IMG/VR virus record: IMGVR_UViG_3300044712_002668
Coordinates: 124,001-188,000 of that record
Length of the DNA stretch: 64,000 nucleotides
Reading direction: 5' to 3' (one strand)
The notes beneath the pieces were generated by a model. That model ran no database searches, had not been told where the DNA came from, and worked only from the letters and a program-made list of their open reading frames with translations. Shown here in pieces: positions 48,062-63,929 of the stretch. The stretch's first letter is position 1; each line of letters begins with the position of its first letter. A program made the position numbers and the translations under genes.

Positions 48062-48727
48062 ATGGCCTACGTTCTTTATGTTGCTGATACGGAAACAACA
48101 GGTACAGATGCTGAGAAGCATGACATCATAGAAGTATGTTTTTGGAGAGTTGGATCTCTAGATAACATACTTACCCAAGATGACAATAAAACTTGGTGGA
48201 TGAAACCATTGAACGTAGCCTCCATTGAAGATGAGGCTTTACGGGTAAACAAACACAAAAAAGAAGATATTCTACATAAGACTGCAGAAGGTAAGGAAAA
48301 GTATAAACATCCATCTGAAGTTCTGCCAGAAATCGAGATGTGGTTTATGCAGGATGGGGCGGCAGCAGAGGAACGTGTACTCGTAGGTCATAACCCAGAT
48401 TTCGATTATAAGTTTCTTCTCAAGTTATGGGAAAAGTCTGGCAATGCCAATGAGTTTCCTATTGGCTATTGGATAGATAACAGTGATGGTACAAGAAGGC
48501 ATCAGATCTTTAAGTATGATACAATGGAGCTTGTACGTTTGATTGATCTGTGTACAGGAAAGAAAAGAAACTACTATAATCTAAGCTCTTTGGTTAAAGC
48601 CTTTAACATAACAAAGGCTCAGGCACATAGAGCTGATGGTGATACAAAAATGACAAAAGATTTGTTCCTCAAAATTATCGAGGTGCTAAAACCTGTTTTG
48701 AGTGAGAAGTTTTCTGATTGTTACTAG
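48062..48727 (+). CDS. DEDDh 3'-5' exonuclease (DnaQ-like)
   Basis: DTETTG, GHNPDFD, DT, AHRADGD. Confidence 0.88.
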   Translation: MAYVLYVADTETTGTDAEKHDIIEVCFWRVGSLDNILTQDDNKTWWMKPLNVASIEDEALRVNKHKKEDILHKTAEGKEKYKHPSEVLPEIEMWFMQDGAAAEERVLVGHNPDFDYKFLLKLWEKSGNANEFPIGYWIDNSDGTRRHQIFKYDTMELVRLIDLCTGKKRNYYNLSSLVKAFNITKAQAHRADGDTKMTKDLFLKIIEVLKPVLSEKFSDCY

Positions 48728-51576: not shown

Positions 51577-53082
51577 ATGTCAAAAGATAAAGTTAAGACG
51601 GAAGATAAGCCTCTTATTCCAGAAGGTAAATATGATGTTACCGATGTCAAAGAATTGAACTTCTTTGATCTATCTGGAGAAAAGGCAAAAACAAAAGGTA
51701 CTTCTAATAAGTTTTATCATGCCGAAATCCAGAAAGAAAAATCTGGAACTCGTGTTCAGCTATATACTATGTACGGTGCCACTGGAAAAGTACAAGCCAG
51801 GGAGTGGCGGTATTTTTCAGATGAGCTTGCTGCCAAGAAAGAATTCAATAGAATTATTTCCAGCAAACTAAAAAAAGGATATGTAGAGATTGATGTAGCT
51901 CAAAGAGCTTTAGGATCTGATTCTGCTAAACAGATAACCAAACCAGTTGTTTTGGCAAATGCAGATCATCTTGTTACGCCTGTTTCTTCAAAGCTTGATG
52001 CTGGACAAAAAAGAATTGTTGAAATATTCTTTGGAAGTCAGGATCATTTCGTAGCTACCACTCTTAAATGTCCACTAGGACAGCTATCAAATACACAGAT
52101 AGATAAAGGCCGTGACGTTCTAAATCAAGCCAAAGATATTGTAAATAGTGGTAGTATTGATAAGAATAAGCTTACTGATTTAACCAATCAATTTTACGGC
52201 TTGATTCCACATAATCTAGGAGGAGGGGCTAGAGGTCAGATGACCGAGCTTCTTCTTGATACTCTTCCAAAGATTGTGGGAAAGGAAAGCGATCTTGATA
52301 CCTTGCTTGATGCGAAGCAAGTCAATGCTGTTTTGAAATCCGATTCAACTATTGATACAAAGTATGATAGTTTGAATTGTGATTTCCTTTCAGTAGATCC
52401 TTCTAGTGATATTTTCAAATTTATGTCCTCGTATTTTCAGGATACAAAAGTACGTGGACATGGTTATGATAAAGAGCGTGTAGTAAATATTTGGGAAATG
52501 AACCGCAAGGATGATAAAGAAAAAGCATTCTTGAAGAATACTGATATAATTGCAAAGCAATGTGGTAAACATTCCTTTGTTTCTGAAACTGAACGTTTAT
52601 CAGGTGGGAAGAATAAGCTGTGGACTCCTGATAAGCGTCCTGATTTAGATAAAGATTTGGTAAAGCTATATACCAATGCAAATGTTTGGTTGTGTTGGCA
52701 TGGAACCAGATCTGCTAATCTGGTTGGTATTACCAGGCGTGGTTTGTTGATTAGACCATCTGGAGCTGTGTATACTGGATCCATGTTTGGAGATGGTAAG
52801 TATTTTGCCTGGCAAAGTACAAAGTCTTTGAACTATACAGATGGTGGATATTGGACTGGAGGTAGACATAATGTATCTTCCAGGTTTATGTTTATCATGG
52901 ATGTTGCTATGGGTAAGCAACACATCTCTCATAATTCACACTTTTTCAAAAAACCACCAGCCGGATTTCATTCTGTATATGGTAAGGCAGGCTCTGGCTT
53001 GTGGAATGATGAAATGATTACATACGATTTTGATGATAAGGATAATCAGTCTGCAATAAGATACTTGTTGGAAATCGTTTAA
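51577..53082 (+). CDS. Poly(ADP-ribose) polymerase-like: WGR + regulatory + catalytic domain
   Basis: WGR-like 'SNKFY...YG.TG...K.KKGY'; regulatory 'CPLGQLS..QI..G...L', 'LTNQFYGLIPH'; catalytic H-Y-E triad WHGTR / MFGDGKYFA / NDEMITY. Confidence 0.9.
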   Translation: MSKDKVKTEDKPLIPEGKYDVTDVKELNFFDLSGEKAKTKGTSNKFYHAEIQKEKSGTRVQLYTMYGATGKVQAREWRYFSDELAAKKEFNRIISSKLKKGYVEIDVAQRALGSDSAKQITKPVVLANADHLVTPVSSKLDAGQKRIVEIFFGSQDHFVATTLKCPLGQLSNTQIDKGRDVLNQAKDIVNSGSIDKNKLTDLTNQFYGLIPHNLGGGARGQMTELLLDTLPKIVGKESDLDTLLDAKQVNAVLKSDSTIDTKYDSLNCDFLSVDPSSDIFKFMSSYFQDTKVRGHGYDKERVVNIWEMNRKDDKEKAFLKNTDIIAKQCGKHSFVSETERLSGGKNKLWTPDKRPDLDKDLVKLYTNANVWLCWHGTRSANLVGITRRGLLIRPSGAVYTGSMFGDGKYFAWQSTKSLNYTDGGYWTGGRHNVSSRFMFIMDVAMGKQHISHNSHFFKKPPAGFHSVYGKAGSGLWNDEMITYDFDDKDNQSAIRYLLEIV

Positions 53083-56649: not shown

Positions 56650-56708
56650 ATTCAATGTCGAGCAGGCTGCTGAAAAGGACTCCCATAACCAAAGGAGTCC
56701 TTTTCATT

Positions 56709-57347
56709 ATGTCCATAATTTTTTACGTTCTAGATACAGAAACGACAGGTTTGAAAACTGGATGGCATGAAATCAATCAAATATCAGTTCTTAACTCTGC
56801 ATCAAAAGATCAGATAACAATTGATATATGTGTTGACTACCCCGAAAGGGCTTCCAAAGAAGCCTTGGAAGTTCAAGGCAAATCAGTCCATGATCTGGAT
56901 AATGGAATTTCTCTGAAAGATGCAGTCATTCAAGTTAATGAATTCTTTCAGAAAGATAATTCAAATAAAGCTGCCAGGTGTATTGTGGCTCACAATGCTC
57001 CTTTTGATCGTAAATTTTGCCACTCAGCTTGGGACTCTGTTGAGTTGGAATTTCCTGCCGATTTGTGGATTTGTACCAAACAGTTGGCTCAAAGATATGT
57101 TAAAAAGTATGGTGGAGAAAAAATAGCTCAAGCTCAAAGCTCCCCGAAACCAAAGTTCGGTTTGAACAACTTCCTTCAAGGGGTAGGAATTACTCCAAAA
57201 TTAGGAGCACACCGTGCTGATACAGATACAATCAATACTCTTGAACTTTTCAATTGGTTGCTAAACTCTCAAACAGAATATGTTTCTCTTATCGAACGTA
57301 TCCCTCATAAAAAAGAAAACGTTAAAGATTTATTAGATTCTTATTAA
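56709..57347 (+). CDS. Second DEDDh 3'-5' exonuclease
   Basis: LDTETTG, AHNAPFD, AHRADTD; AGGAG upstream of MSIIF. Confidence 0.85.
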   Translation: MSIIFYVLDTETTGLKTGWHEINQISVLNSASKDQITIDICVDYPERASKEALEVQGKSVHDLDNGISLKDAVIQVNEFFQKDNSNKAARCIVAHNAPFDRKFCHSAWDSVELEFPADLWICTKQLAQRYVKKYGGEKIAQAQSSPKPKFGLNNFLQGVGITPKLGAHRADTDTINTLELFNWLLNSQTEYVSLIERIPHKKENVKDLLDSY

Positions 57348-57691: not shown

Positions 57692-57731
57692 GTCTACGCC
57701 ATACTTTAATGGCGCGAAATAGGAGGCATAC

Positions 57732-59327
57732 ATGTCTAGCGCAAAGTTTGTACAGCAAGTTATTGGTAACGATCCAAACCGTAAGGTTATCAAGATTGAT
57801 TCTTATTTGTCAGCTAACGAGACTGCTGAAGAGGCAGTGGCTCGTGTATTGCTGACTGGTATTTTGAAGAATCAATTCTATCGTTCGGTAGATGATATTA
57901 CAAAGGAAGCCCTACCTCTTGTAGAGAATATGGCAGATAGCAATCCTGAATATCTGCTTAAGGCGGCTTGTATTGCTCGTAATAGCCATATGAAGGGTAT
58001 GGTCAAGGTTGCCATTGCAGCAATCAACGGGCATGCAAATGATACTTTCTTGAATCGTGATGAGATCAAGGAAGCTATTGTTTCTTTGTTAGCAACATTC
58101 CATCCTGGTCAGTTGATTCAGTTTGTGGAACTGTGCAAGTCCAAGAAGTTTGGGCGTGGATTTGGTTCCAGACCCCAGAAGTGGGTTCGTTCTGCCATGG
58201 AGCGTTGGAATGCGTGGAAGCTTGAGGAGAATACCCTTAAGTATCCAACAGCATTGAATCAACTTGTACGTTTGGTTCATCCACGTTTCAAGGATGAGCG
58301 TGCTGGATTGGTATTGTACGTTCTTGATGGCAAGAAGTCTGAAGCAACTGGTGCTAAGCAGAAGGTTGTGGAAACTTTAAAGGCTGACACTTCTGATAAG
58401 AAGAAGATTGCCAATGCCATCTTGGATCATAAGATTCCATGGGATGTTATCAAGGGTTTTGCAGGCTTGGATGGTCCTATTGCCATGGCTGCAATGACTC
58501 AAATGGGATTGACGGCTTTATTGCTTAATATCCGTTCTTTGGAAGAGCATAATGTTTTCTCTACCACAGATGGATTGAGGGCTCTAAGCCTCAAGATGGA
58601 TGAGGTCAAGGATGGTCGTGCCATTCCTATGGACTTTGCAAAGCCATATATCTACGCTACCAATAGCAAGGTAAAAGATATCTTGCTGGATGCGATGGTA
58701 TCTACTCTTGATGTACCAATGCCTGCTATCGAAGGTAGGAAGGTTGGTGTGTCTGTTGATATCTCTGGTTCTATGGCCGGTGAAACTCTTAAAACTGCCG
58801 GTCTTCTTGCAGTTCCTTTCCTGAAGGCAAATGATTTGTGGTTTACTACTTTTGATACTTCATTGTATGAAGAGGGTAATACCATTAATCAGGGACGTAG
58901 GGATTTTTGGGGTTATTCCTCAAATGGTTTCTGTCCTAAGTTGAAGGGTAGGAGTCGCAAAGATCAAGTGAAGTCTTTGCTTGATTTGAAGACCGCTGGT
59001 GGAACCGATGTCTCCCAGCCAATTGTTCATGCAATTGCTTCACAAAGGTTTTTGGATGTTATGGTGCTTATCACCGATGAGCAGCAGAATGCCGGAACTC
59101 CTTTGATGAGGGTTTGGAATGAGTATTTGGCAAAGGTAAACCCAAGAGCCCATCTTTGGGTAATCAATGCCACAAATTCAAACTGGCATGCTGCAGATTT
59201 TGGTCATAGGAATGTTACAGTGTATCAGACTATGACCCCAGCATTATTCAAGAATCTTGAATACGTTGGTCAGGACTTGGTCAAAGCCATCAAAGACTTT
59301 GATTTCAAGGATGTTGGGAAGCGTTAG
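57732..59327 (+). CDS. Ro60/Rsr-like TROVE domain RNA-binding protein with vWA domain
   Basis: 'LLTG....QFY', 'GRGFGSRPQK....', 'LKYP...LVRLVHP', 'IPW', 'MGLTALLLNI..L'; vWA MIDAS DISGSM, GGTD, LITDEQ; AGGAGG RBS. Confidence 0.9.
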   Translation: MSSAKFVQQVIGNDPNRKVIKIDSYLSANETAEEAVARVLLTGILKNQFYRSVDDITKEALPLVENMADSNPEYLLKAACIARNSHMKGMVKVAIAAINGHANDTFLNRDEIKEAIVSLLATFHPGQLIQFVELCKSKKFGRGFGSRPQKWVRSAMERWNAWKLEENTLKYPTALNQLVRLVHPRFKDERAGLVLYVLDGKKSEATGAKQKVVETLKADTSDKKKIANAILDHKIPWDVIKGFAGLDGPIAMAAMTQMGLTALLLNIRSLEEHNVFSTTDGLRALSLKMDEVKDGRAIPMDFAKPYIYATNSKVKDILLDAMVSTLDVPMPAIEGRKVGVSVDISGSMAGETLKTAGLLAVPFLKANDLWFTTFDTSLYEEGNTINQGRRDFWGYSSNGFCPKLKGRSRKDQVKSLLDLKTAGGTDVSQPIVHAIASQRFLDVMVLITDEQQNAGTPLMRVWNEYLAKVNPRAHLWVINATNSNWHAADFGHRNVTVYQTMTPALFKNLEYVGQDLVKAIKDFDFKDVGKR

Positions 59328-59964
59328 TAGACGCTGAAGACATTGGTACGTGAATGTAGCGGACCTCGGGCGTAGCAGCTCGGGGTCCGTTGCAGTTTGG
59401 TAGCTGCAATAATTGCGTTCCTATCAAACCACCAATTCCAATCAATAATCCAACCAACAATCTAATCATTGCAGTTTGACGTTCTTCGCTGACCTTTTGA
59501 TCGCTCTTTTTCTTTTCGTGTTGAAGTTCTAGTTCTTTATCTATACTGTTTCTATGGCGTTTTTCTTCTTCGGTTATTTTATCTTTTACTTCTGTTACAG
59601 TACCAACAATTTCGCCAACTTTTTTACTGACAGCTTCAACATCATCTTTTATAGATGATAAATCTTTCTGACTGTTTTGATGTACATCTATATGGGATTC
59701 AAGCCATTTTTCTATATTTGATATTCTTTGTTCTATAAGGGCCATTCTAGTTAAAATAGAAGTAGCCCCATTACCATCTCTTATTACATCTGATAGGGCT
59801 TTTACGTTTTCTCTTAATATATTTAATTCTGTTTTTACAGTAGCAAAATCAGCTTCTGATTCTTTGATTTCATTTAAAAGAGTATGTGTAAGTTGAGATG
59901 TGGAATCCAAACCCTCTGCTAATCGTTCAAGTAAAACATCATTTATGTTCTTGGGAGGTGCCAT
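59305..59964 (-). CDS. Coiled-coil protein with C-terminal transmembrane helix
   Basis: Long heptad-rich region followed by LLVGLLIGIGGLIG. Confidence 0.65.
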   Translation of the reverse strand: MAPPKNINDVLLERLAEGLDSTSQLTHTLLNEIKESEADFATVKTELNILRENVKALSDVIRDGNGATSILTRMALIEQRISNIEKWLESHIDVHQNSQKDLSSIKDDVEAVSKKVGEIVGTVTEVKDKITEEEKRHRNSIDKELELQHEKKKSDQKVSEERQTAMIRLLVGLLIGIGGLIGTQLLQLPNCNGPRAATPEVRYIHVPMSSASTNASQHP

Positions 59965-60112
59965 GAGTAACTTCTCCAATTATTTGGGCAGTATTTTTAC
60001 AAGCCTCTCTACAATATCTTATATTTTTAATAGTTCTTTTCAATCGGAATTTTAATTTATTTATATTACTTTCTAATTCTTCAACTGTTCTATTGATATC
60101 ATCTTCACTCAT
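59939..60112 (-). CDS. Small coiled-coil hypothetical protein (57 aa, not in the ORF track)
   Basis: MSEDDINRTVEELESNINKLKFRLK...; GGAG upstream; overlaps the start of the next gene. Confidence 0.45.
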   Translation of the reverse strand: MSEDDINRTVEELESNINKLKFRLKRTIKNIRYCREACKNTAQIIGEVTHGTSQEHK

Positions 60113-60274
60113 AATATACTCCGATTTGTTTCCACATTAATAAGTGATCTTATGCATGTAATACTTGTTTTCAGGGTCGAGAGTCTGAAAAAATCGTACT
60201 TGAGGTTTAATTCTTTGAAAAACTGGTAATATTTAGTCATATACCTGAGGCTGTCAGAAAACGGTAGAAAGCCG

Positions 60275-60303
60275 TTGACAGGCTGGGTGAGACAGGTTAG
60301 ACT
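60275..60303 (+). promoter_or_regulatory. Sigma70-type promoter for the small-RNA/tRNA cluster
   Basis: TTGACA-N17-TAGACT. Confidence 0.7.
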
Positions 60304-60340
60304 GGGTGAGTTCGGTTGGCTTTCTAAACCATCCGAGCAC

Positions 60341-60457
60341 TGGTAAACGCGCCGTAGACGTTTCATCATCAATCAACGATTCTAGGTGGTTCGAATCCAC
60401 CAGACGGGCTTGGTAACGGGGAAACCCGGCCTATTCGTCTGCATCTTTCGTTTACCA
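60341..60457 (+). ncRNA. Y-RNA-like RNA 1 (contains a tRNA T-arm)
   Basis: TGGTAAACG/CGTTTACCA helix, GTAGACG/CGTCTGC helix, TTTCATCA linker, GGTGG-TTCGAAT-CCACC T-arm, CGGG-GAAA-CCCG. Confidence 0.7.
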
Positions 60458-60496
60458 ATTTTATTCCTATCATTATGTAAAAGTGATGGTAGGGGC

Positions 60497-60570
60497 TATT
60501 GAACGCGCTAGCTGATCTTTCATCAATATTGCTAATTGAACCTGTGGGTCAGCGTAATTTTCGTTCAATA
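60497..60570 (+). ncRNA. Y-RNA-like RNA 2
   Basis: TATTGAACG/CGTTCAATA, GCTGATC/GGTCAGC, TTTCATCA, 5-bp stem with 7-nt loop ATTGCTA. Confidence 0.7.
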
Positions 60571-60643
60571 TTTTTTTTATTCATGGAATAAGGTGATATA
60601 TAAATGAATATGAATTTGTCAGCTCGAATATGAACGCCCATTT

Positions 60644-60724
60644 GGGGCGTGAGGCATCTGGTAGAGGCCGCCAGTCTTATAAACTGGGAAGATAACGAGC
60701 AGAGTTCAAATCTCTGACGCCCCA
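60644..60724 (+). tRNA. tRNA-Ile(UAU)
   Basis: Acceptor GGGGCGT/ACGCCCC-A, anticodon arm CCAGT-CTTATAA-ACTGG, T-arm CAGAG-TTCAAAT-CTCTG; long variable region; no encoded CCA. Confidence 0.8.
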
Positions 60725-60747
60725 CTGGGTATAGTGAAAATTTAATA

Positions 60748-60819
60748 CGGGGTATAGGACAGAGGTAGTCCGCTAGTTTTGGGAACTAGAAGTCGCTGGT
60801 TCAAATCCAGCTACCCCGA
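60748..60819 (+). tRNA. tRNA-Pro(UGG)
   Basis: CGGGGTA/TACCCCG-A, D-arm GGAC/GTCC, CTAGT-TTTGGGA-ACTAG, GCTGG-TTCAAAT-CCAGC. Confidence 0.92.
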
Positions 60820-60821
60820 CA

Positions 60822-60898
60822 GATAACGCGATACAATATCTTTCATCATAATAATTGGGATATTACACGAAAACAAGGTATTGTTAATTTTCGTTATC
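60822..60898 (+). ncRNA. Y-RNA-like RNA 3
   Basis: GATAACG/CGTTATC, ACAATATC/GGTATTGT, TTTCATCA, 5-bp stem with 7-nt loop ATTGGGA. Confidence 0.7.
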
Positions 60899-60903
60899 AA
60901 CTT

Positions 60904-60927
60904 AAACCACCTTTTGGTGGTTTTTTT
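60904..60927 (+). terminator. Terminator of the RNA cluster
   Basis: AAACCACC-tttt-GGTGGTTTTTTT. Confidence 0.8.
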
Positions 60928-60967
60928 GTTTTAAGGGAATATTTTTGCTTATAGGTGGCAGGTAAAT

Positions 60968-61837
60968 ATGGGATCACCTAATTTGAATAAGTTTCTTTCT
61001 TCATTACAAGAAATGTCTACGTTTTTCACTACTGATGAGAGTTTTAAAAAAACAGAAGCATCTCCTTACAAACCTATTGTAAACTGGTGTGCTACTTTCT
61101 TGCAAAAATATCCAGCAAGCGTAAAAGATATAAATTGGGATGCTCAGTTCAATTCGATGCTTGTTAGTTTCAATAATACTATAAATCAAGTATCTAAAGA
61201 ATATAGAATAAACGTACCAAGAGATAGTCTTAAAATATTTCCTCCAGGTAAAAATTCTTTTTCTGATAAGCCAGATGAAAATCTTAGATTGATAGAGAGT
61301 TCTTCTGAAGAAAATTATCAAATTATAACAAGATGGGTTTCTGGTATTAAAACTGGCTTTGTTTGGAGTGGTCCAGTTGGCAGGATGGTTACGCAGTTTA
61401 AACAACTTTCTGAATTTATTTTAGATGAAGGTGTTCAAGAAGGTTTGAAAAAATTAAATAATATAGCTTTGCAAGTAGCTTTGACTTCATGGGCTAAACA
61501 AGGTAGAGCATTTATATTTTACCCACAATTTGGTTGGGATGATAGATTAGATAAATATTTAGAAATGTGCAATACTTGGTTTGCAACTATGGGATTTCTT
61601 AAAGTTAAATTCCAATTATCAGCAAGACAGGGTAGAGAGCATAATATAAAAACCATTACCCAAGAAAATGATAAAAGAGCTCTATTTAATATAGATTTAT
61701 TAAAAAAAATAGCAAACATCTTACAGAAAAGATTAGGATTACATGTAAGAGATGTAGCTCAAAAGAAAGCTAATAAATCATTAAAACAAATAGAAAAATG
61801 TGCTTCATACTTTTTATCTCATTGTAAAAAATCTTGA
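60968..61837 (+). CDS. Hypothetical protein
   Basis: 289-aa ORF, no recognisable family. Confidence 0.65.
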   Translation: MGSPNLNKFLSSLQEMSTFFTTDESFKKTEASPYKPIVNWCATFLQKYPASVKDINWDAQFNSMLVSFNNTINQVSKEYRINVPRDSLKIFPPGKNSFSDKPDENLRLIESSSEENYQIITRWVSGIKTGFVWSGPVGRMVTQFKQLSEFILDEGVQEGLKKLNNIALQVALTSWAKQGRAFIFYPQFGWDDRLDKYLEMCNTWFATMGFLKVKFQLSARQGREHNIKTITQENDKRALFNIDLLKKIANILQKRLGLHVRDVAQKKANKSLKQIEKCASYFLSHCKKS

Positions 61838-61928
61838 GGTCGAGGGCAAGGGTACAGCAAGCAATCTGTATTGCTAACTCAATATGGCATTTCATATTGA
61901 GGGATAGCAACTTGTCCTTTATCTCGAA
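61834..61928 (+). ncRNA. Putative structured RNA element (three-way junction)
   Basis: AGGGCAAG/CTTGTCCT closing helix, TACAG/CTGTA hairpin, TTGCTA/TAGCAA plus CTCAATATG/CATATTGAG hairpin. Confidence 0.45.
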
Positions 61929-61936
61929 GTTAAAAA

Positions 61937-62695
61937 ATGAAGACAATTGTTTTTGATTTGAATGGTACATTAACAGAATCTAAATCCGATATTGATCCAG
62001 AAATGCTAAGCTTGCTTGTCAAGCTACTTAGCAAACAAAAGGTATGTATCCTATCCGGTGCTTCTTGGAAGCAGATAGAGAAACAAATTATTTCATATCT
62101 TCCTACAAAAGATATCAACATACTAAATAATTTGTATGTACTACCAACAGCAGGAGCTAGTTTATTCCAATATTGGAATAAGTATGGCTGGGTAGCTATT
62201 TATCAGAACAAGCTTGATAAACATGAGTCTGATAAAATTTCCAAGGTACTTGAAAAGTATTTGAAGCAGAATTCTCTATCTGACAGGTTGTGGGGTAAGC
62301 AGGTGGAGAACAGAGAGTCTCAAGTAACTTTGTCTTGCCTTGGTCAAAAGGCCCCGCTTGATGATAAGGAAAATTGGGATCCTGATTTTTCCAAGCGTAA
62401 AGCAATTGTTTCAGAGTTAGTAAAAGAACTGCCTAATTTTGACTTGCGTATTGCTGGGTATAATTCAATTGATATTACCCCAAAGGGTATTAATAAACAC
62501 TCTGGACTTCATCAGTTGATGAAGCATTTGCATATCAGCAAAGATGAGGTTGTATTTGTTGGTGATGCAATTTTCGAGGGTGGTGTTGACTATCCTGTAG
62601 TTGATATCGGTATTGAGTTTGTAAAAGTAACTTCTATTGATGAAACCAAGAAATTTTTAACTCAATTGCTTGTGGTAGCAGATAAGGCGGCATAA
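61937..62695 (+). CDS. HAD-IIB phosphomannomutase-like hydrolase
   Basis: FDLNGTLTESK, SGA, ENRESQ, WDPD..KR, SIDITPKGINK, FVGDAIFEGG.DYP. Confidence 0.8.
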   Translation: MKTIVFDLNGTLTESKSDIDPEMLSLLVKLLSKQKVCILSGASWKQIEKQIISYLPTKDINILNNLYVLPTAGASLFQYWNKYGWVAIYQNKLDKHESDKISKVLEKYLKQNSLSDRLWGKQVENRESQVTLSCLGQKAPLDDKENWDPDFSKRKAIVSELVKELPNFDLRIAGYNSIDITPKGINKHSGLHQLMKHLHISKDEVVFVGDAIFEGGVDYPVVDIGIEFVKVTSIDETKKFLTQLLVVADKAA

Positions 62696-62697
62696 CC

Positions 62698-62934
62698 ATG
62701 AGAGCAGATGAGTTTTCAGTTTGGTACCATGCCTATATGGCTGGTATCCAGGCAAGAGGTAGTTCCTCTCAAGAGATTGATGCTGTTATTACCGATGCTG
62801 TAACAGTTGCTTCTGTTGCCTTGGAAAAATACAAGAAAGTTGATATCGATACCGATAAAAACAAAATGATGGAAAAGGCTTTACAAGATACTGTCAATAA
62901 AATATCCGAAAAGTTATCAAGTATAAAAGGTTGA
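62698..62934 (+). CDS. Hypothetical protein
   Basis: 78-aa coupled ORF. Confidence 0.5.
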   Translation: MRADEFSVWYHAYMAGIQARGSSSQEIDAVITDAVTVASVALEKYKKVDIDTDKNKMMEKALQDTVNKISEKLSSIKG

Positions 62935-62945
62935 TAATTTGATAT

Positions 62946-63061
62946 ATAAGCGGAACGCGAGTTTAGAATCACCATTAGTATAATGGCAGTACGGTACTCA
63001 TATGAGTACCAGTGCAGGTTCGAATCCTGTAGGTGATTTATACAAATTTCGTTCCGCTTAT
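62946..63061 (+). ncRNA. Y-RNA-like RNA 4 (YrlA-like architecture, with a tRNA-like domain)
   Basis: 12-bp ATAAGCGGAACG/CGTTCCGCTTAT, AATCACC/GGTGATT acceptor-like helix, D-like GTAT-AATGGCA-GTAC, palindromic GGTACTCATATGAGTACC arm, T-arm GCAGG-TTCGAAT-CCTGT. Confidence 0.8.
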
Positions 63062-63076
63062 TTATTTAAGGGTTAA

Positions 63077-63274
63077 ATGCAAGATGAATTTCTTAGAGAG
63101 AGAATATCAGCTGTTGGAAGTTATGGTAAAATACTAGAGATAGTATTTGATGATATGTATAGGGAATTTGAAACGTCTTATAATAAAAAATTTCATAAAC
63201 TTGGGAATCTTCATTGTATAATAAAATACAAAGATATAGATGATAATGTAATGTTTTATTGTGTTCCAAGGTAA
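63077..63274 (+). CDS. Small hypothetical protein
   Basis: 65-aa ORF. Confidence 0.45.
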   Translation: MQDEFLRERISAVGSYGKILEIVFDDMYREFETSYNKKFHKLGNLHCIIKYKDIDDNVMFYCVPR

Positions 63275-63275
63275 T

Positions 63276-63929
63276 ATGTCAAGCGAAAAAGTTTCTTTGG
63301 ATATTAGTTCAATATCAAATTGGATTTGTAACTATGCAACTTCTTATGGTAAGGATACATTACTAGTACCGTTTGATGGTTCAACAAATTCTGCCGTTGT
63401 AACCTGGTGTTGTTTACAATCAACTATATTAAAAACCGGTACACTTAAAGTATTATCTGTTGTTCCTAATAATGAACAAGAATTGTTCAAGAAAATATTC
63501 AATCATTCATATGCTGAATTGCCTGGGAGCCAACTGTATTATCATTCTCTAGAATTAGCTAAAAATTCAAATGGGATATGTGTTGGATGTGTTGATAAAA
63601 CATATGGTTCTTTATATCGTTCCTATAAAAAGTACAATGAGTATTTAGCTGATATTCAGCCTTTATATGATTTCCTATATTCTGAAATTGTAGAGATGTC
63701 AGAGTCTTTAGGTTTCACAAAGAACATTGCCCCGCTTGATTACAGAATATATGAATGGGCTTTACAGCAAGAATCGTATTATAAGATTATTACATCGCTA
63801 GATGCCCCAAATAAATCTTATAAGTGGTATACTTATACAGAAGAACAAAGGTCATTTATTGCAAAAATGCACCAGAGAGAAAAGAAAACAAAACATAAAG
63901 AAATAAAAGTTCCTTACTTCAAAAAATGA
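63276..63929 (+). CDS. Degenerate NAD+ synthetase (NadE)-like protein
   Basis: 'I..WI..Y...', PP-loop-like 'PFDGSTNSAVV', 'Y.KY....ADIQPL.D...SEI.....LG', 'KT.HK'. Confidence 0.55.
   Translation: MSSEKVSLDISSISNWICNYATSYGKDTLLVPFDGSTNSAVVTWCCLQSTILKTGTLKVLSVVPNNEQELFKKIFNHSYAELPGSQLYYHSLELAKNSNGICVGCVDKTYGSLYRSYKKYNEYLADIQPLYDFLYSEIVEMSESLGFTKNIAPLDYRIYEWALQQESYYKIITSLDAPNKSYKWYTYTEEQRSFIAKMHQREKKTKHKEIKVPYFKK

What the first reader, a model, noticed from the sequence alone, without database searches (positions are those of the whole stretch)
62946..63061. A nearly whole tRNA fold capped by the Ro-type handle, with a palindromic dead anticodon arm
D-like arm, T-arm (GGTTCGAATCC) and a 7-bp acceptor-like helix are present. 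The acceptor end continues into the AACG/CGTT handle and has no CCA. The anticodon arm is a perfect 18-nt palindrome (GGTACTCAT|ATGAGTACC) that contains the Met-like CTCATA but cannot form a normal 7-nt loop. This matches the YrlA concept (Ro-binding plus tRNA-like modules). Automated tools would probably call it a pseudo-tRNA. The palindrome could also allow RNA dimerisation. It lies 2 kb from its siblings and has its own TGATATAT motif.
Basis: partly seen in the sequence, partly recalled or inferred. Interest (0 to 1): 0.72.

Follow-up and report, generated by a model that had tools for sequence, protein, structure and literature searches.

The report
Phage Y RNA shaped like a pre-tRNA
A giant phage that encodes a Ro60 protein also carries a family of small Ro-partner-like (Y) RNAs, and this one is unusual because its body is an almost complete, normally ordered tRNA cloverleaf with a sealed, unusable anticodon arm.

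Summary
Window 62946-63061 (+) folds into a long terminal stem: a 12-bp outer helix, a bulged C and a 6-bp helix. This stem runs into an acceptor-like helix with D, T and anticodon-like arms (-47.2 kcal/mol, z = -7.5). ARAGORN calls the core tRNA-??? with a 2-base anticodon, and Rfam tRNA scores it 34.2 bits. The anticodon arm is a 7-bp hairpin with an AUAU loop, so it cannot decode.

The handle AACGCG...TTTCGTT, with covarying flanking pairs, occurs in 4 elements of the window, 8 in this 336-kb phage record and at least 46 in related phages. In IMG/VR, complete elements turned up almost only in this clade. A divergent Ro60 gene (57732-59327) lies 3.6 kb upstream on the same strand.

Most siblings have the circularly permuted YrlA order: T arm, closed acceptor hairpin, then D arm. 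This element has the opposite topology, joined through the acceptor stem. I found only one analogue, in a related phage.

It is best read as a phage Y RNA: a new variant of a known kind. Ro60 binding, expression and processing are untested. The "Met-like" anticodon, the TGATATAT motif and dimerisation have no support beyond chance or generic hairpin behaviour.

The parts
62946..62957 (+). 5' strand of the outer terminal helix (ATAAGCGG + invariant AACG). The family-wide conserved 5' motif AACGCG is 62954-62959.
   Evidence: 12 bp paired with 63050-63061; motif invariant, flanks covary in the family.
62958..62958 (+). Bulged C between the invariant AACG/CGUU helix and the next helix, followed by a G-U pair (G62959-U63049).
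   Evidence: The C is invariant in 28 of 28 family members.
62959..62964 (+). 5' strand of the second helix (GAGUUU), pairing with 63044-63049. It contains two G-U pairs.
62967..62975 (+). 5' strand of the acceptor-like stem. It is AAUCACC in ARAGORN's reading, or AUCACC[A]U with A62974 bulged in the Rfam alignment. G62966-U63039 extends the helix, so there is no free acceptor end.
62976..62992 (+). U8-A9 and the D arm: stem GUAU/GUAC and loop AAUGGCA, with A14, A15, G18, G19 and A21.
   Evidence: alignment to RF00005.
62993..63010 (+). Anticodon-like arm, an 18-nt perfect palindrome. The minimum-energy form is 7 bp plus an AUAU loop. The tRNA models open it only to a 6-nt loop, CAUAUG. One nucleotide is missing relative to tRNA positions 26-44.
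   Evidence: 4-nt loop -47.2, 6-nt loop -43.7, 8-nt loop -42.3 kcal/mol.
63011..63030 (+). The 4-nt variable region C44-A-G-U48 begins at 63010; 63011-63013 are its last three bases. The T arm follows: GCAGG-UUCGAAU-CCUGU, with G49-U65 as a wobble pair.
   Evidence: The T arm is identical to that of the phage's tRNA-Leu(aag).
63031..63043 (+). 3' strand of the acceptor-like stem (A-GGUGAUU), then U-AUAC, the internal loop facing A62965. No CCA is encoded.
63044..63061 (+). 3' strands of the second helix (AAAUUU) and the outer helix (CGUUCCGCUUAU). The family-wide conserved 3' motif TTTCGTT is 63047-63053. A T-rich tail follows, to about 63067.
60342..60456 (+). Sibling A. It has the same handle, a TTTCATC box and the T arm GGTGG-TTCGAAT-CCACC placed early, which is the permuted order. 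Orthologues exist in related phages.
60498..60569 (+). Sibling B. It has the same handle and a TTTCATC box, and is a short hairpin type, comparable to YrlB.
60821..60899 (+). Sibling C. It has the same handle and a TTTCATC box, and starts directly after tRNA-Pro.
57732..59327 (+). Gene for a divergent Ro60/Rsr orthologue (531 aa), the proposed protein partner.
   Evidence: Pfam vWA_Ro60 at 7e-8. The family profile hits D. radiodurans Rsr 2nvo at 9.5e-19 over residues 32-489, and also Ro60 chains 9nen and 1yvp. About 90 homologues were found, the distant ones carrying TROVE.
56655..57347 (+). RNase T-family 3'-5' exonuclease gene directly upstream of Ro60. This synteny is conserved in relatives. 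It is a candidate effector, by inference only.
60275..60933 (+). Apparent operon holding the siblings: a promoter-like site at 60275-60303, then A, B, tRNA-Ile(tat) 60644-60725, tRNA-Pro(tgg) 60748-60820 and C, ending with a terminator-like hairpin at 60904-60923 plus a T run.
   Evidence: These are consensus matches only.

Best explanation
The element is a gene for a non-decoding, tRNA-shaped small RNA of about 108-116 nt. It belongs to a phage family of Y-RNA-like partners of a phage-encoded Ro60 protein.

Shown:
- The 5' and 3' ends pair into a long stem. The stem carries the family's invariant bulged motif, 5'-AACG[C]G paired with UUUCGUU-3'.
- The stem is continuous with the acceptor helix of an otherwise complete cloverleaf. 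The cloverleaf keeps the nucleotides needed for the tRNA elbow and core: U8, A14, A15:U48, G18 G19, U54 U55 C56 and A58.
- The anticodon arm is sealed as a 7-bp hairpin with a 4-nt loop, so no anticodon can be presented.

Inferred:
- The phage Ro60 ring binds the bulged handle, as Ro60 binds the bulged helix of other Y RNAs.
- The tRNA-like body acts as the effector module. It could give nuclease resistance. It could tether or decoy a tRNA-recognising enzyme, such as RNase P, a CCA-adding enzyme, the neighbouring RNase T-type exonuclease or host PNPase. It could also gate Ro60's cavity.
- The module has a 7-8 bp acceptor helix stacked on a T arm, so it may be nicked by RNase P in the way M. 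smegmatis YrlA is. The 5' piece would stay attached through the 14 bp of the handle.
For: - Structure: the fold is strongly favoured and strand-specific. ARAGORN gives tRNA-??? with a 2-nt anticodon. Rfam tRNA scores 34.2 bits, with a 6-nt loop in the alignment.
- Handle in the genome: there are 4 copies in the window against about 0 expected and 8 in the genome record.
- Handle in relatives: G001 has 10, G002 has 8, G006 has 10, and G003 and G005 have 2 each.
- Covariation: I selected 46 elements without using their flanks. Outer pairs 1-3 are formed in 42, 44 and 41 of the 46, each with four Watson-Crick pair types. Shifted controls give 5-32.
- Ro60 gene: it lies 3.6 kb upstream on the same strand.
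- Position of siblings: elements lie directly downstream of Ro60 in G000, L009, L010, L011, L013, L190 and L191.
- Distribution: a scan of 2.9 million viral contigs for handle plus box found complete elements only in this clade, apart from one AT-rich match that is probably chance. The one clade contig without Ro60 (G006) is the complementary half of a Ro60-bearing contig from the same sample.
- Sibling architecture: many siblings have the diagnostic YrlA order of T arm, closed acceptor hairpin, UA, then D arm. This matches PMC4201824 and bioRxiv 10.1101/312249.
- Precedent: phage Ro60 plus Y-like RNA pairs are already known (PMC4201824; PMC12135203).
Against: - There is no expression data. 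No RNA run was listed.
- There is no binding test. The complex predictor did not fold a protein-RNA pair.
- The published bacterial Ro motif GNCGAAN0-1G is absent. Ro60 binding to AACGCG is inferred from context only.
- This element lacks the TTTCATC box that nearly all siblings carry.
- It has no orthologue at the syntenic site in three relatives, so no covariation supports its own cloverleaf.
- Co-occurrence with Ro60 is within one related clade, so the cases are not independent.
- No convincing promoter lies directly upstream.
Confidence: 0.7

Rival explanations
1. It is a precursor that is fully processed, by RNase P at the 5' side and trimming plus CCA addition at the 3' side, into a free tRNA-sized RNA. 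The handle is then only a processing or stability signal. The product could be a decoy for tRNA-targeting host nucleases or an unusual adaptor.
For: - It has a 7-bp acceptor stacked on a 5-bp T arm and an intact elbow.
- An internal loop (A62965 facing AUAC 63040-63043) loosens the helix next to the acceptor end.
- M. smegmatis YrlA, which has a 7-bp acceptor, is cut by RNase P and receives CCA in vivo (PMC4201824).
- The phage encodes a CCA-adding-type nucleotidyltransferase, and relatives place that gene beside Ro60.
- Siblings are interleaved with tRNAs and often start right after a tRNA 3' end.
Against: - The acceptor helix runs on for two more pairs and then into 14 further base pairs, which is a poor context for RNase P.
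- The exact invariant family motif would be pointless if the handle were simply discarded.
- The anticodon arm cannot decode.
- In M. smegmatis the cut halves stayed bound to Rsr, so cleavage would not exclude the Y RNA reading.
Confidence: 0.15
2. It is a decaying tRNA pseudogene that happens to sit inside an inverted repeat or terminator hairpin at the end of the upstream operon, and it has no RNA function of its own.
For: - It is absent from the syntenic site of three relatives.
- It gets a low tRNA score and has a one-nucleotide shortfall in the anticodon arm.
- It has a bulged acceptor stem.
- A T-rich tail follows the outer helix.
- A second odd tRNA-like gene, without a handle, exists in the genome.
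Against: - The flanks are not a generic inverted repeat. They are the exact 6+7-nt family motif with the bulged C, in the correct orientation and strand. The chance expectation is about 0.
- All elbow and core positions are intact, whereas decay would be expected to hit them at random.
- The same sequence is held unchanged in an independent metagenome run (contig X2 with 0 differences).
- A related phage has another unpermuted element whose anticodon-like arm is capped by a tetraloop.
Confidence: 0.1
3. The 18-bp palindrome acts at the DNA level, as a protein-binding or recombination site, or drives RNA dimerisation. On this view that is the point of the element.
For: - It is a perfect palindrome containing CATATG.
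- A computed duplex of two arms is more stable than two hairpins: -30.6 against 2 x -9.4 kcal/mol.
Against: - The genome holds six 18-nt perfect palindromes.
- Any 7-bp hairpin with a self-complementary tetraloop is a palindrome, and any such hairpin gives the same cofold result.
- The arm occupies exactly the anticodon-arm position of a cloverleaf.
- The G001 analogue has a non-palindromic GCAA loop.
Confidence: 0.03

Closest known systems
YrlA RNAs (bacterial and mycobacteriophage Y RNA-like A; Chen et al. 2014, PMC4201824; structure in bioRxiv 10.1101/312249)
   Same: - It is modular: a terminal stem formed by the 5' and 3' ends carries a conserved protein-binding motif, and a tRNA-like effector module has canonical D and T arms and elbow nucleotides.
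- It has no free CCA end.
- It is encoded within 4 kb of Ro60, on the same strand.
- The siblings in this phage clade do have the YrlA order.
   Different: - YrlA is circularly permuted, with the Ro stem in place of the anticodon stem and the acceptor closed by a loop. Here the Ro-type stem extends the acceptor and the anticodon arm is closed by a loop.
- The GNCGAAN0-1G motif is replaced by AACG[C]G, and the 3' strand (UUUCGUU) is conserved as well.
- No sequence-level homology to YrlA was tested or shown.
Deinococcus radiodurans Yrn1 (as described in PMC4201824)
   Same: - The terminal Ro-binding stem sits at the position of the acceptor.
- It has a T arm.
- It has an 'anticodon arm' with a 5-bp stem and a 6-nt rather than 7-nt loop. 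The tRNA models give the same 6-nt reading here.
   Different: - Yrn1 has only partial D-loop features and no 7-bp acceptor helix. This element has a full D arm, a full acceptor helix and the 15:48 pair.
- I had no Yrn1 sequence in hand, so the comparison rests on the paper's description.
Phage Ro60 with Y RNA-like RNAs (mycobacteriophages, Caulobacter phage CcrColossus, Bacillus phage G, Thermus phage phiLo Yrl1/Yrl2; PMC4201824, PMC12135203, PMC7824862)
   Same: A phage-encoded Ro60 homologue has small stem-bulge-stem RNAs encoded nearby. Jumbo phages are among the carriers.
   Different: - The phiLo Yrls carry a CGAA motif in an internal bulge and are not described as full cloverleaves.
- Here there are many copies per genome, about 8-10 or more, interleaved with tRNA arrays, and the conserved handle is different.
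Bona fide tRNA or pre-tRNA (Rfam RF00005)
   Same: It has a cloverleaf with all four arms in normal order and canonical tertiary-pair nucleotides. It scores 34.2 bits, above the gathering score.
   Different: - It has a 4- or 6-nt anticodon loop without the U33/R37 layout.
- The acceptor stem is bulged.
- The acceptor end is locked into a 14-bp extension.
- No CCA is encoded.

Membership tests
YrlA-type Y RNA | Encoded within about 4 kb of a Ro60/TROVE gene, on the same strand (search criterion of PMC4201824) | tested here: met
   The Ro60 ORF ends at 59327 and the element starts at 62946, both on the + strand.
YrlA-type Y RNA | 5' and 3' ends pair into a stem whose 5' strand carries GNCGAAN0-1G | tested here: not met
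   The stem is present, but the 5' strand reads GCGGAACGCGAG and contains no GNCGAA. A different motif, AACGCG, is invariant in the family.
YrlA-type Y RNA | tRNA-like module with conserved D and T arms and elbow nucleotides | tested here: met
   The RF00005 alignment shows U8, A14, A15:U48, G18 G19, U54 U55 C56 and A58.
YrlA-type Y RNA | Circularly permuted order (V, T arm, closed acceptor hairpin, D arm), with the Ro stem at the anticodon-stem position | tested here: not met
   In this element the T arm lies 60 nt after the start of the 5' AACGCG motif and ends 23 nt before the element's 3' end. In its siblings the distances are 23-53 nt after and 51-97 nt before. The anticodon arm is closed and the acceptor is open into the handle.
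YrlA-type Y RNA | Bound by Ro60/Rsr; carries tRNA modifications (pseudouridine 55, dihydrouridine) | not testable with these tools
   The complex job was not folded for protein-RNA, and no RNA data were available.
Handle family of this phage clade (AACGCG...TTTCGTT elements) | Invariant AACG[C]G and UUUCGUU motifs flanked by 3-4 covarying outer base pairs, on the tRNA/Ro60 strand | tested here: met
   This element has the motifs exactly, with an unusually long outer helix (8 extra bp).
Handle family of this phage clade (AACGCG...TTTCGTT elements) | (A/T)T(T/C)CATC box 15-17 nt after the start of the handle | tested here: not met
   The box is absent here. About 25 of the 29 elements matched the box pattern, and two of the four that did not carry a CCTTCATC variant.
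Functional tRNA (RF00005) | Cloverleaf scoring above the Rfam gathering score | tested here: met
   It scores 34.2 bits against 29 in the sensitive mode. It was not reported in the default scan.
Functional tRNA (RF00005) | 7-nt anticodon loop presenting a 3-nt anticodon | tested here: not met
   ARAGORN gives a 2-nt 'anticodon'. The loop is 4 nt in the minimum-energy fold and 6 nt in the model alignment.
Functional tRNA (RF00005) | Processed to a free CCA 3' end and aminoacylated | not testable with these tools
   No CCA is encoded, and there are no RNA data.

The most novel reading that the evidence does not exclude
This could be a previously undescribed class of Y RNA: a 'pre-tRNA mimic' in which Ro60 is tethered to the acceptor end of an otherwise complete, anticodon-dead tRNA. 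The RNP would present a tRNA body to RNase P, CCA-adding enzyme, exonucleases or host anticodon nucleases. It would sit within a jumbo-phage clade that has expanded its Y RNA genes to about ten or more per genome inside its tRNA arrays, using a new Ro60 recognition motif. If so, the phage would be using Ro60 RNPs for tRNA surveillance, repair or counter-defence during infection.
Probability: 0.15. Interest if true: 0.8.

Novelty: new variant of a known kind. Interest (0 to 1): 0.55.

Why it matters
Y RNAs and Ro60 are conserved from bacteria to humans, but what their effector modules recruit is still largely open. Phage Ro60 systems have barely been studied.

This clade offers a natural series of modules on one constant handle: hairpin types, permuted tRNA mimics, and two tRNA mimics in the normal arm order. 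This element is the more complete of those two.

The element shows that the tRNA-like module can be attached to the Ro stem through either end of the L-shape. That constrains models in which the geometry between Ro60 and the tRNA elbow matters.

It also gives a compact construct, about 110 nt of RNA plus a 531-aa protein, for testing three things:
- a new Ro60 recognition motif;
- whether RNase P or the CCA-adding enzyme acts on Ro-bound tRNA mimics;
- whether phages use such RNPs in the tRNA-centred arms race with host defences.

For annotation, such elements will be miscalled as pseudo-tRNAs or undetermined tRNAs.

Tried and rejected
1. Megablast of 57700-63300 against GenBank phages found nothing.
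2. A single-protein scan of viral contigs with Ro60 found nothing. The alignment-based scan gave 5 close and 2 distant loci.
3. BLAST of the element against five related records gave only 14-21-nt T-arm or D-arm scraps.
4. Pattern scans for unpermuted elements (handle, late T arm, handle):
   - The first viral scan returned one real tRNA.
   - The second viral scan gave 25 loci, of which only the G001 element is genuine.
Every hit was a chance match around an ordinary tRNA, with flank pairing at random levels. Absence elsewhere is therefore not shown.
5. Syntenic sites between the o78 and o222 homologues in L009, L010 and L012 hold no element.
6. RNA runs: none was listed. DNA contigs from other runs carry the same sequence, so they give no informative variants.
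7. Complex prediction with Ro60 plus the RNA was not folded. It counts as no evidence either way.
8. An origin from one of the phage's own tRNAs was rejected. The best identities, 0.66-0.73, are close to the 0.61 median between unrelated tRNAs, and only the T arm equals that of tRNA-Leu(aag).
9. The minus-strand reading was rejected. Its 5' strand would read AACGAAA and so contain CGAA. However, the T loops, D arms, G-U pairs and folding energy all require the + strand.
10. TGATATATAA as a dedicated promoter was rejected as not above chance. The sigma-70 scan finds nothing directly upstream.
11. Rfam on two distant Ro60 phage loci gave only tRNAs. I could not confirm that the library holds a YrlA model, so 'no YrlA hit' carries little weight.
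12. The odd low-scoring tRNAs next to those distant Ro60 genes show no handle.

Full report
**What is there.**
- The two ends pair over 12 bp: ATAAGCGGAACG with CGTTCCGCTTAT.
- C62958 is bulged. A 6-bp helix follows (GAGUUU/AAAUUU, with two G-U pairs), then a small internal loop.
- The helix then runs straight into a 7-8 bp acceptor-like stem.
- Inside are a D arm (62978-62992), an 18-nt perfectly palindromic anticodon-like arm (62993-63010), a 4-nt variable region and a T arm, GCAGG-UUCGAAU-CCUGU (63014-63030).

RNAfold gives exactly this structure at -47.2 kcal/mol. The z-score is -7.5 and none of 200 shuffles folds as well. The reverse strand folds 8 kcal/mol worse, and five G-U pairs fix the + strand.

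ARAGORN reports tRNA-??? with a two-base anticodon. Rfam's tRNA model gives 34.2 bits against a gathering score of 29, but only in the sensitive mode, not in the default scan.

In that alignment the elbow and core nucleotides are all present: U8, A14, A15:U48, G18 G19, G22-G46, and U54 U55 C56 ... A58. The defects are:
- a bulged A62974 in the acceptor stem;
- an anticodon arm one nucleotide short of tRNA positions 26-44. It closes as 7 bp plus AUAU (-47.2 kcal/mol). Opening it to a 6-nt or 8-nt loop costs 3.5 or 4.9 kcal/mol.

No CCA is encoded.

**The handle is a family signature.**
AACGCG...TTTCGTT, with complementary flanks, occurs four times in the window against about 0 expected: A at 60346-60452, B at 60502-60565, C at 60825-60895 and this element.

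The window lies in a 335,988-bp IMG/VR virus record, a jumbo phage with about 35% GC and 36 tRNA-like genes. That record holds eight such elements.

Related phage records carry 10 (G001), 8 (G002), 10 (G006) and 2 each (G003, G005). Further relatives have one or two directly downstream of Ro60.

I selected 46 elements by the 5' motif plus the internal box alone, so the flanks played no part in the choice. The three outer base pairs are formed in 42, 44 and 41 of the 46, each with four Watson-Crick pair types. With the 3' partner shifted, only 5-32 are formed.

So the handle is a 3-4 bp covarying helix, then invariant AACG/CGUU, an invariant bulged C and a G-U pair. This element has the motifs exactly, but its outer helix is 8 bp longer than the family norm.

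**Link to Ro60.**
ORF 57732-59327 (+, 531 aa) hits Pfam's Ro60 vWA domain.
- A profile of it and 22 homologues hits D. radiodurans Rsr (2nvo) at 9.5e-19 over residues 32-489. It also hits Ro60 chains 9nen and X. laevis Ro60 (1yvp), and weakly the Thermus phage TROVE protein.
- Its distant homologues carry the TROVE domain.
- An RNase T-type exonuclease gene precedes it, and this gene order is kept in relatives.

The element starts 3.6 kb downstream of Ro60 on the same strand, inside the 4-kb same-strand criterion used to find YrlA genes (PMC4201824).

A scan of 2.9 million viral contigs for handle plus box gave 82 loci. Complete elements occurred only in this clade, apart from one AT-rich match that is probably chance.

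The one clade contig with elements but no Ro60 (G006) comes from the same sample as the one with Ro60 but no elements (G004). The two hold complementary sets of this genome's genes. I infer that they are two halves of one genome.

All these genomes are related to each other, so the co-occurrence is not independent evidence. The stronger argument is architectural.

**Siblings are YrlA-like; this element is not.**
Many siblings read, in order:
- handle and second helix;
- TTTCATC box;
- T arm;
- a closed 7-8 bp hairpin;
- UA and a canonical D arm (for example GCUC-AGUUGGUA-GAGC);
- back to the handle.

That is the circularly permuted tRNA mimic that defines YrlA: the Ro stem takes the place of the anticodon stem and the acceptor is closed by a loop (PMC4201824; bioRxiv 10.1101/312249). 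Others are short hairpins, comparable to YrlB.

Among elements with a recognisable T arm, that arm starts 23-53 nt after the start of the 5' AACGCG motif and ends 51-97 nt before the element's 3' end. The exceptions are this element (60 and 23) and one in G001 (62 and 31).

The G001 element has a D-like hairpin, then a 5-bp arm capped by a GCAA tetraloop, then a T arm. An unpermuted module with a capped anticodon-like arm therefore occurs twice in the clade.

By the description in PMC4201824, D. radiodurans Yrn1 also has an 'anticodon arm' with a 5-bp stem and a 6-nt loop. It is the nearest published analogue in topology.

This element also lacks the TTTCATC box.

**Origin and context.**
The syntenic interval between the o78 and o222 homologues in three relatives has no such element. 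It is therefore lineage-specific at this site, and no orthologues are available for covariation.

Its core has no close paralogue among the phage's own tRNAs. Identities are 0.66-0.73 against a background median of 0.61, and only the T arm equals that of tRNA-Leu(aag).

Siblings A, B and C lie with tRNA-Ile(tat) and tRNA-Pro(tgg) between a promoter-like site (60275-60303) and a terminator-like hairpin (60904-60923). Elsewhere the elements are interleaved with the tRNA array and often begin right after a tRNA 3' end. This recalls the co-transcription of Yrn1/Yrn2 with tRNA-Asp (PMC4201824).

This element stands alone in a 142-nt gap between two ORFs, with a T-rich tail but no convincing sigma-70 promoter.

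**Claims that do not hold.**
- 'Met-like CTCATA': in the best tRNA register, U31 and C32 belong to the stem and the loop edge, so no CAU anticodon is presented.
- 'Own TGATATAT motif': the 10-mer occurs 5 times on + and once on - in the genome, against my rough composition estimate of about 2.6 per strand.
- Palindrome and dimerisation: the genome has six 18-nt perfect palindromes. Any 7-bp hairpin with a self-complementary tetraloop is a palindrome, and any such hairpin gives a favourable computed duplex. The G001 analogue's loop is not palindromic.

**Mechanism.**
Shown: a stable, strand-specific, stem-closed tRNA-shaped fold that cannot decode; exact family handle; Ro60 gene nearby.

Inferred:
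- The phage Ro60 binds the bulged handle. Ro60 recognises a bulged helix in animal Y RNAs, as summarised in PMC12135203 and bioRxiv 10.1101/312249.
- The tRNA-like body serves as a nuclease-resistant effector or tether module.
- The acceptor plus T-arm stack is tRNA-like and a small internal loop adjoins it, so RNase P nicking is possible. M. smegmatis YrlA is the precedent: its halves stay Rsr-bound and one gains CCA (PMC4201824). The 17-21-nt 5' piece would remain held by 14 bp.
- The partner enzyme is unknown. Candidates are the adjacent RNase T-type exonuclease, host PNPase (as for phiLo, PMC12135203), RNase P, and the phage's CCA-adding-type enzyme.

**What could not be tested.**
- No RNA run was listed.
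- DNA runs hold the identical sequence.
- The complex predictor does not handle protein-RNA.
- I could not confirm that Rfam holds a YrlA model.

**Verdict.**

Phage Ro60 plus Y RNA pairs, including in jumbo phages, are already known (PMC4201824, PMC7824862, PMC12135203). This is therefore a new variant of a known kind. The large, diversified Y RNA repertoire of the clade and its new handle motif are probably of more interest than this single element.

Noticed in passing
window 51577-53082 (+): A 501-aa ORF has WGR, PARP regulatory and PARP catalytic domains, giving a eukaryote-like PARP architecture. Relatives keep it upstream of the same gene block (GMP reductase, ThyX, Ro60).
   Followed up: partly
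G000:C1:204136-204206 (-), outside the window: A second 'tRNA-???' has a 6-nt anticodon loop (ATTGTA) and an atypical T loop (GTGGAAATCC). It sits inside the tRNA array, next to tRNA-Asn, and has no AACGCG/TTTCGTT handle.
   Followed up: partly
window 60644-60725 (+): tRNA-Ile with anticodon TAT is 81-82 nt long, with a 9-nt insertion in the variable region. It scores only 41.7 bits. A second tRNA-Ile(tat) lies in the main array.
   Followed up: no
family-wide; in the window at about 60361-60367 (A), 60518-60524 (B) and 60841-60847 (C): A conserved (A/T)T(T/C)CATC box lies 15-17 nt after the start of the handle in nearly all elements, whatever module follows. It is absent from the element under study. 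Its role is unknown.
   Followed up: partly
G004 (IMGVR_UViG_3300035208_003026) and G006 (IMGVR_UViG_3300035208_002255): Two contigs from one sample look like complementary halves of one genome of about 380 kb. One has Ro60 and no elements; the other has 10 elements and no Ro60. G006 is nevertheless rated 100% complete with inverted terminal repeats.
   Followed up: partly
L190 6653-8146, L191 5915-7438, L192 7092-8627 (all -); G000:C1:19993-20376 (+): In relatives, a CCA-adding/poly(A) polymerase-family gene with an HD domain sits just upstream of the RNase T and Ro60 genes. In this genome the only such gene is about 160 kb away.
   Followed up: partly
window 48062-48727 (+) and 56655-57347 (+): The window has two separate RNase T/DEDDh-type exonuclease genes. 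Relatives also have a second copy, next to the HAD phosphatase gene.
   Followed up: no
window 62162-62181 (+): A 20-nt perfect palindrome, TTATTCCAATATTGGAATAA, lies inside the HAD-phosphatase ORF. It is the longest perfect palindrome in the genome record.
   Followed up: no
L014 and L015 (distant TROVE-positive Ro60 loci in other viral contigs): These distant phage Ro60 genes are also embedded in tRNA arrays, with 5-7 tRNAs within 10 kb. Several are low-scoring tRNA-like sequences, for example L015 9438-9511 at 35.4 bits.
   Followed up: partly
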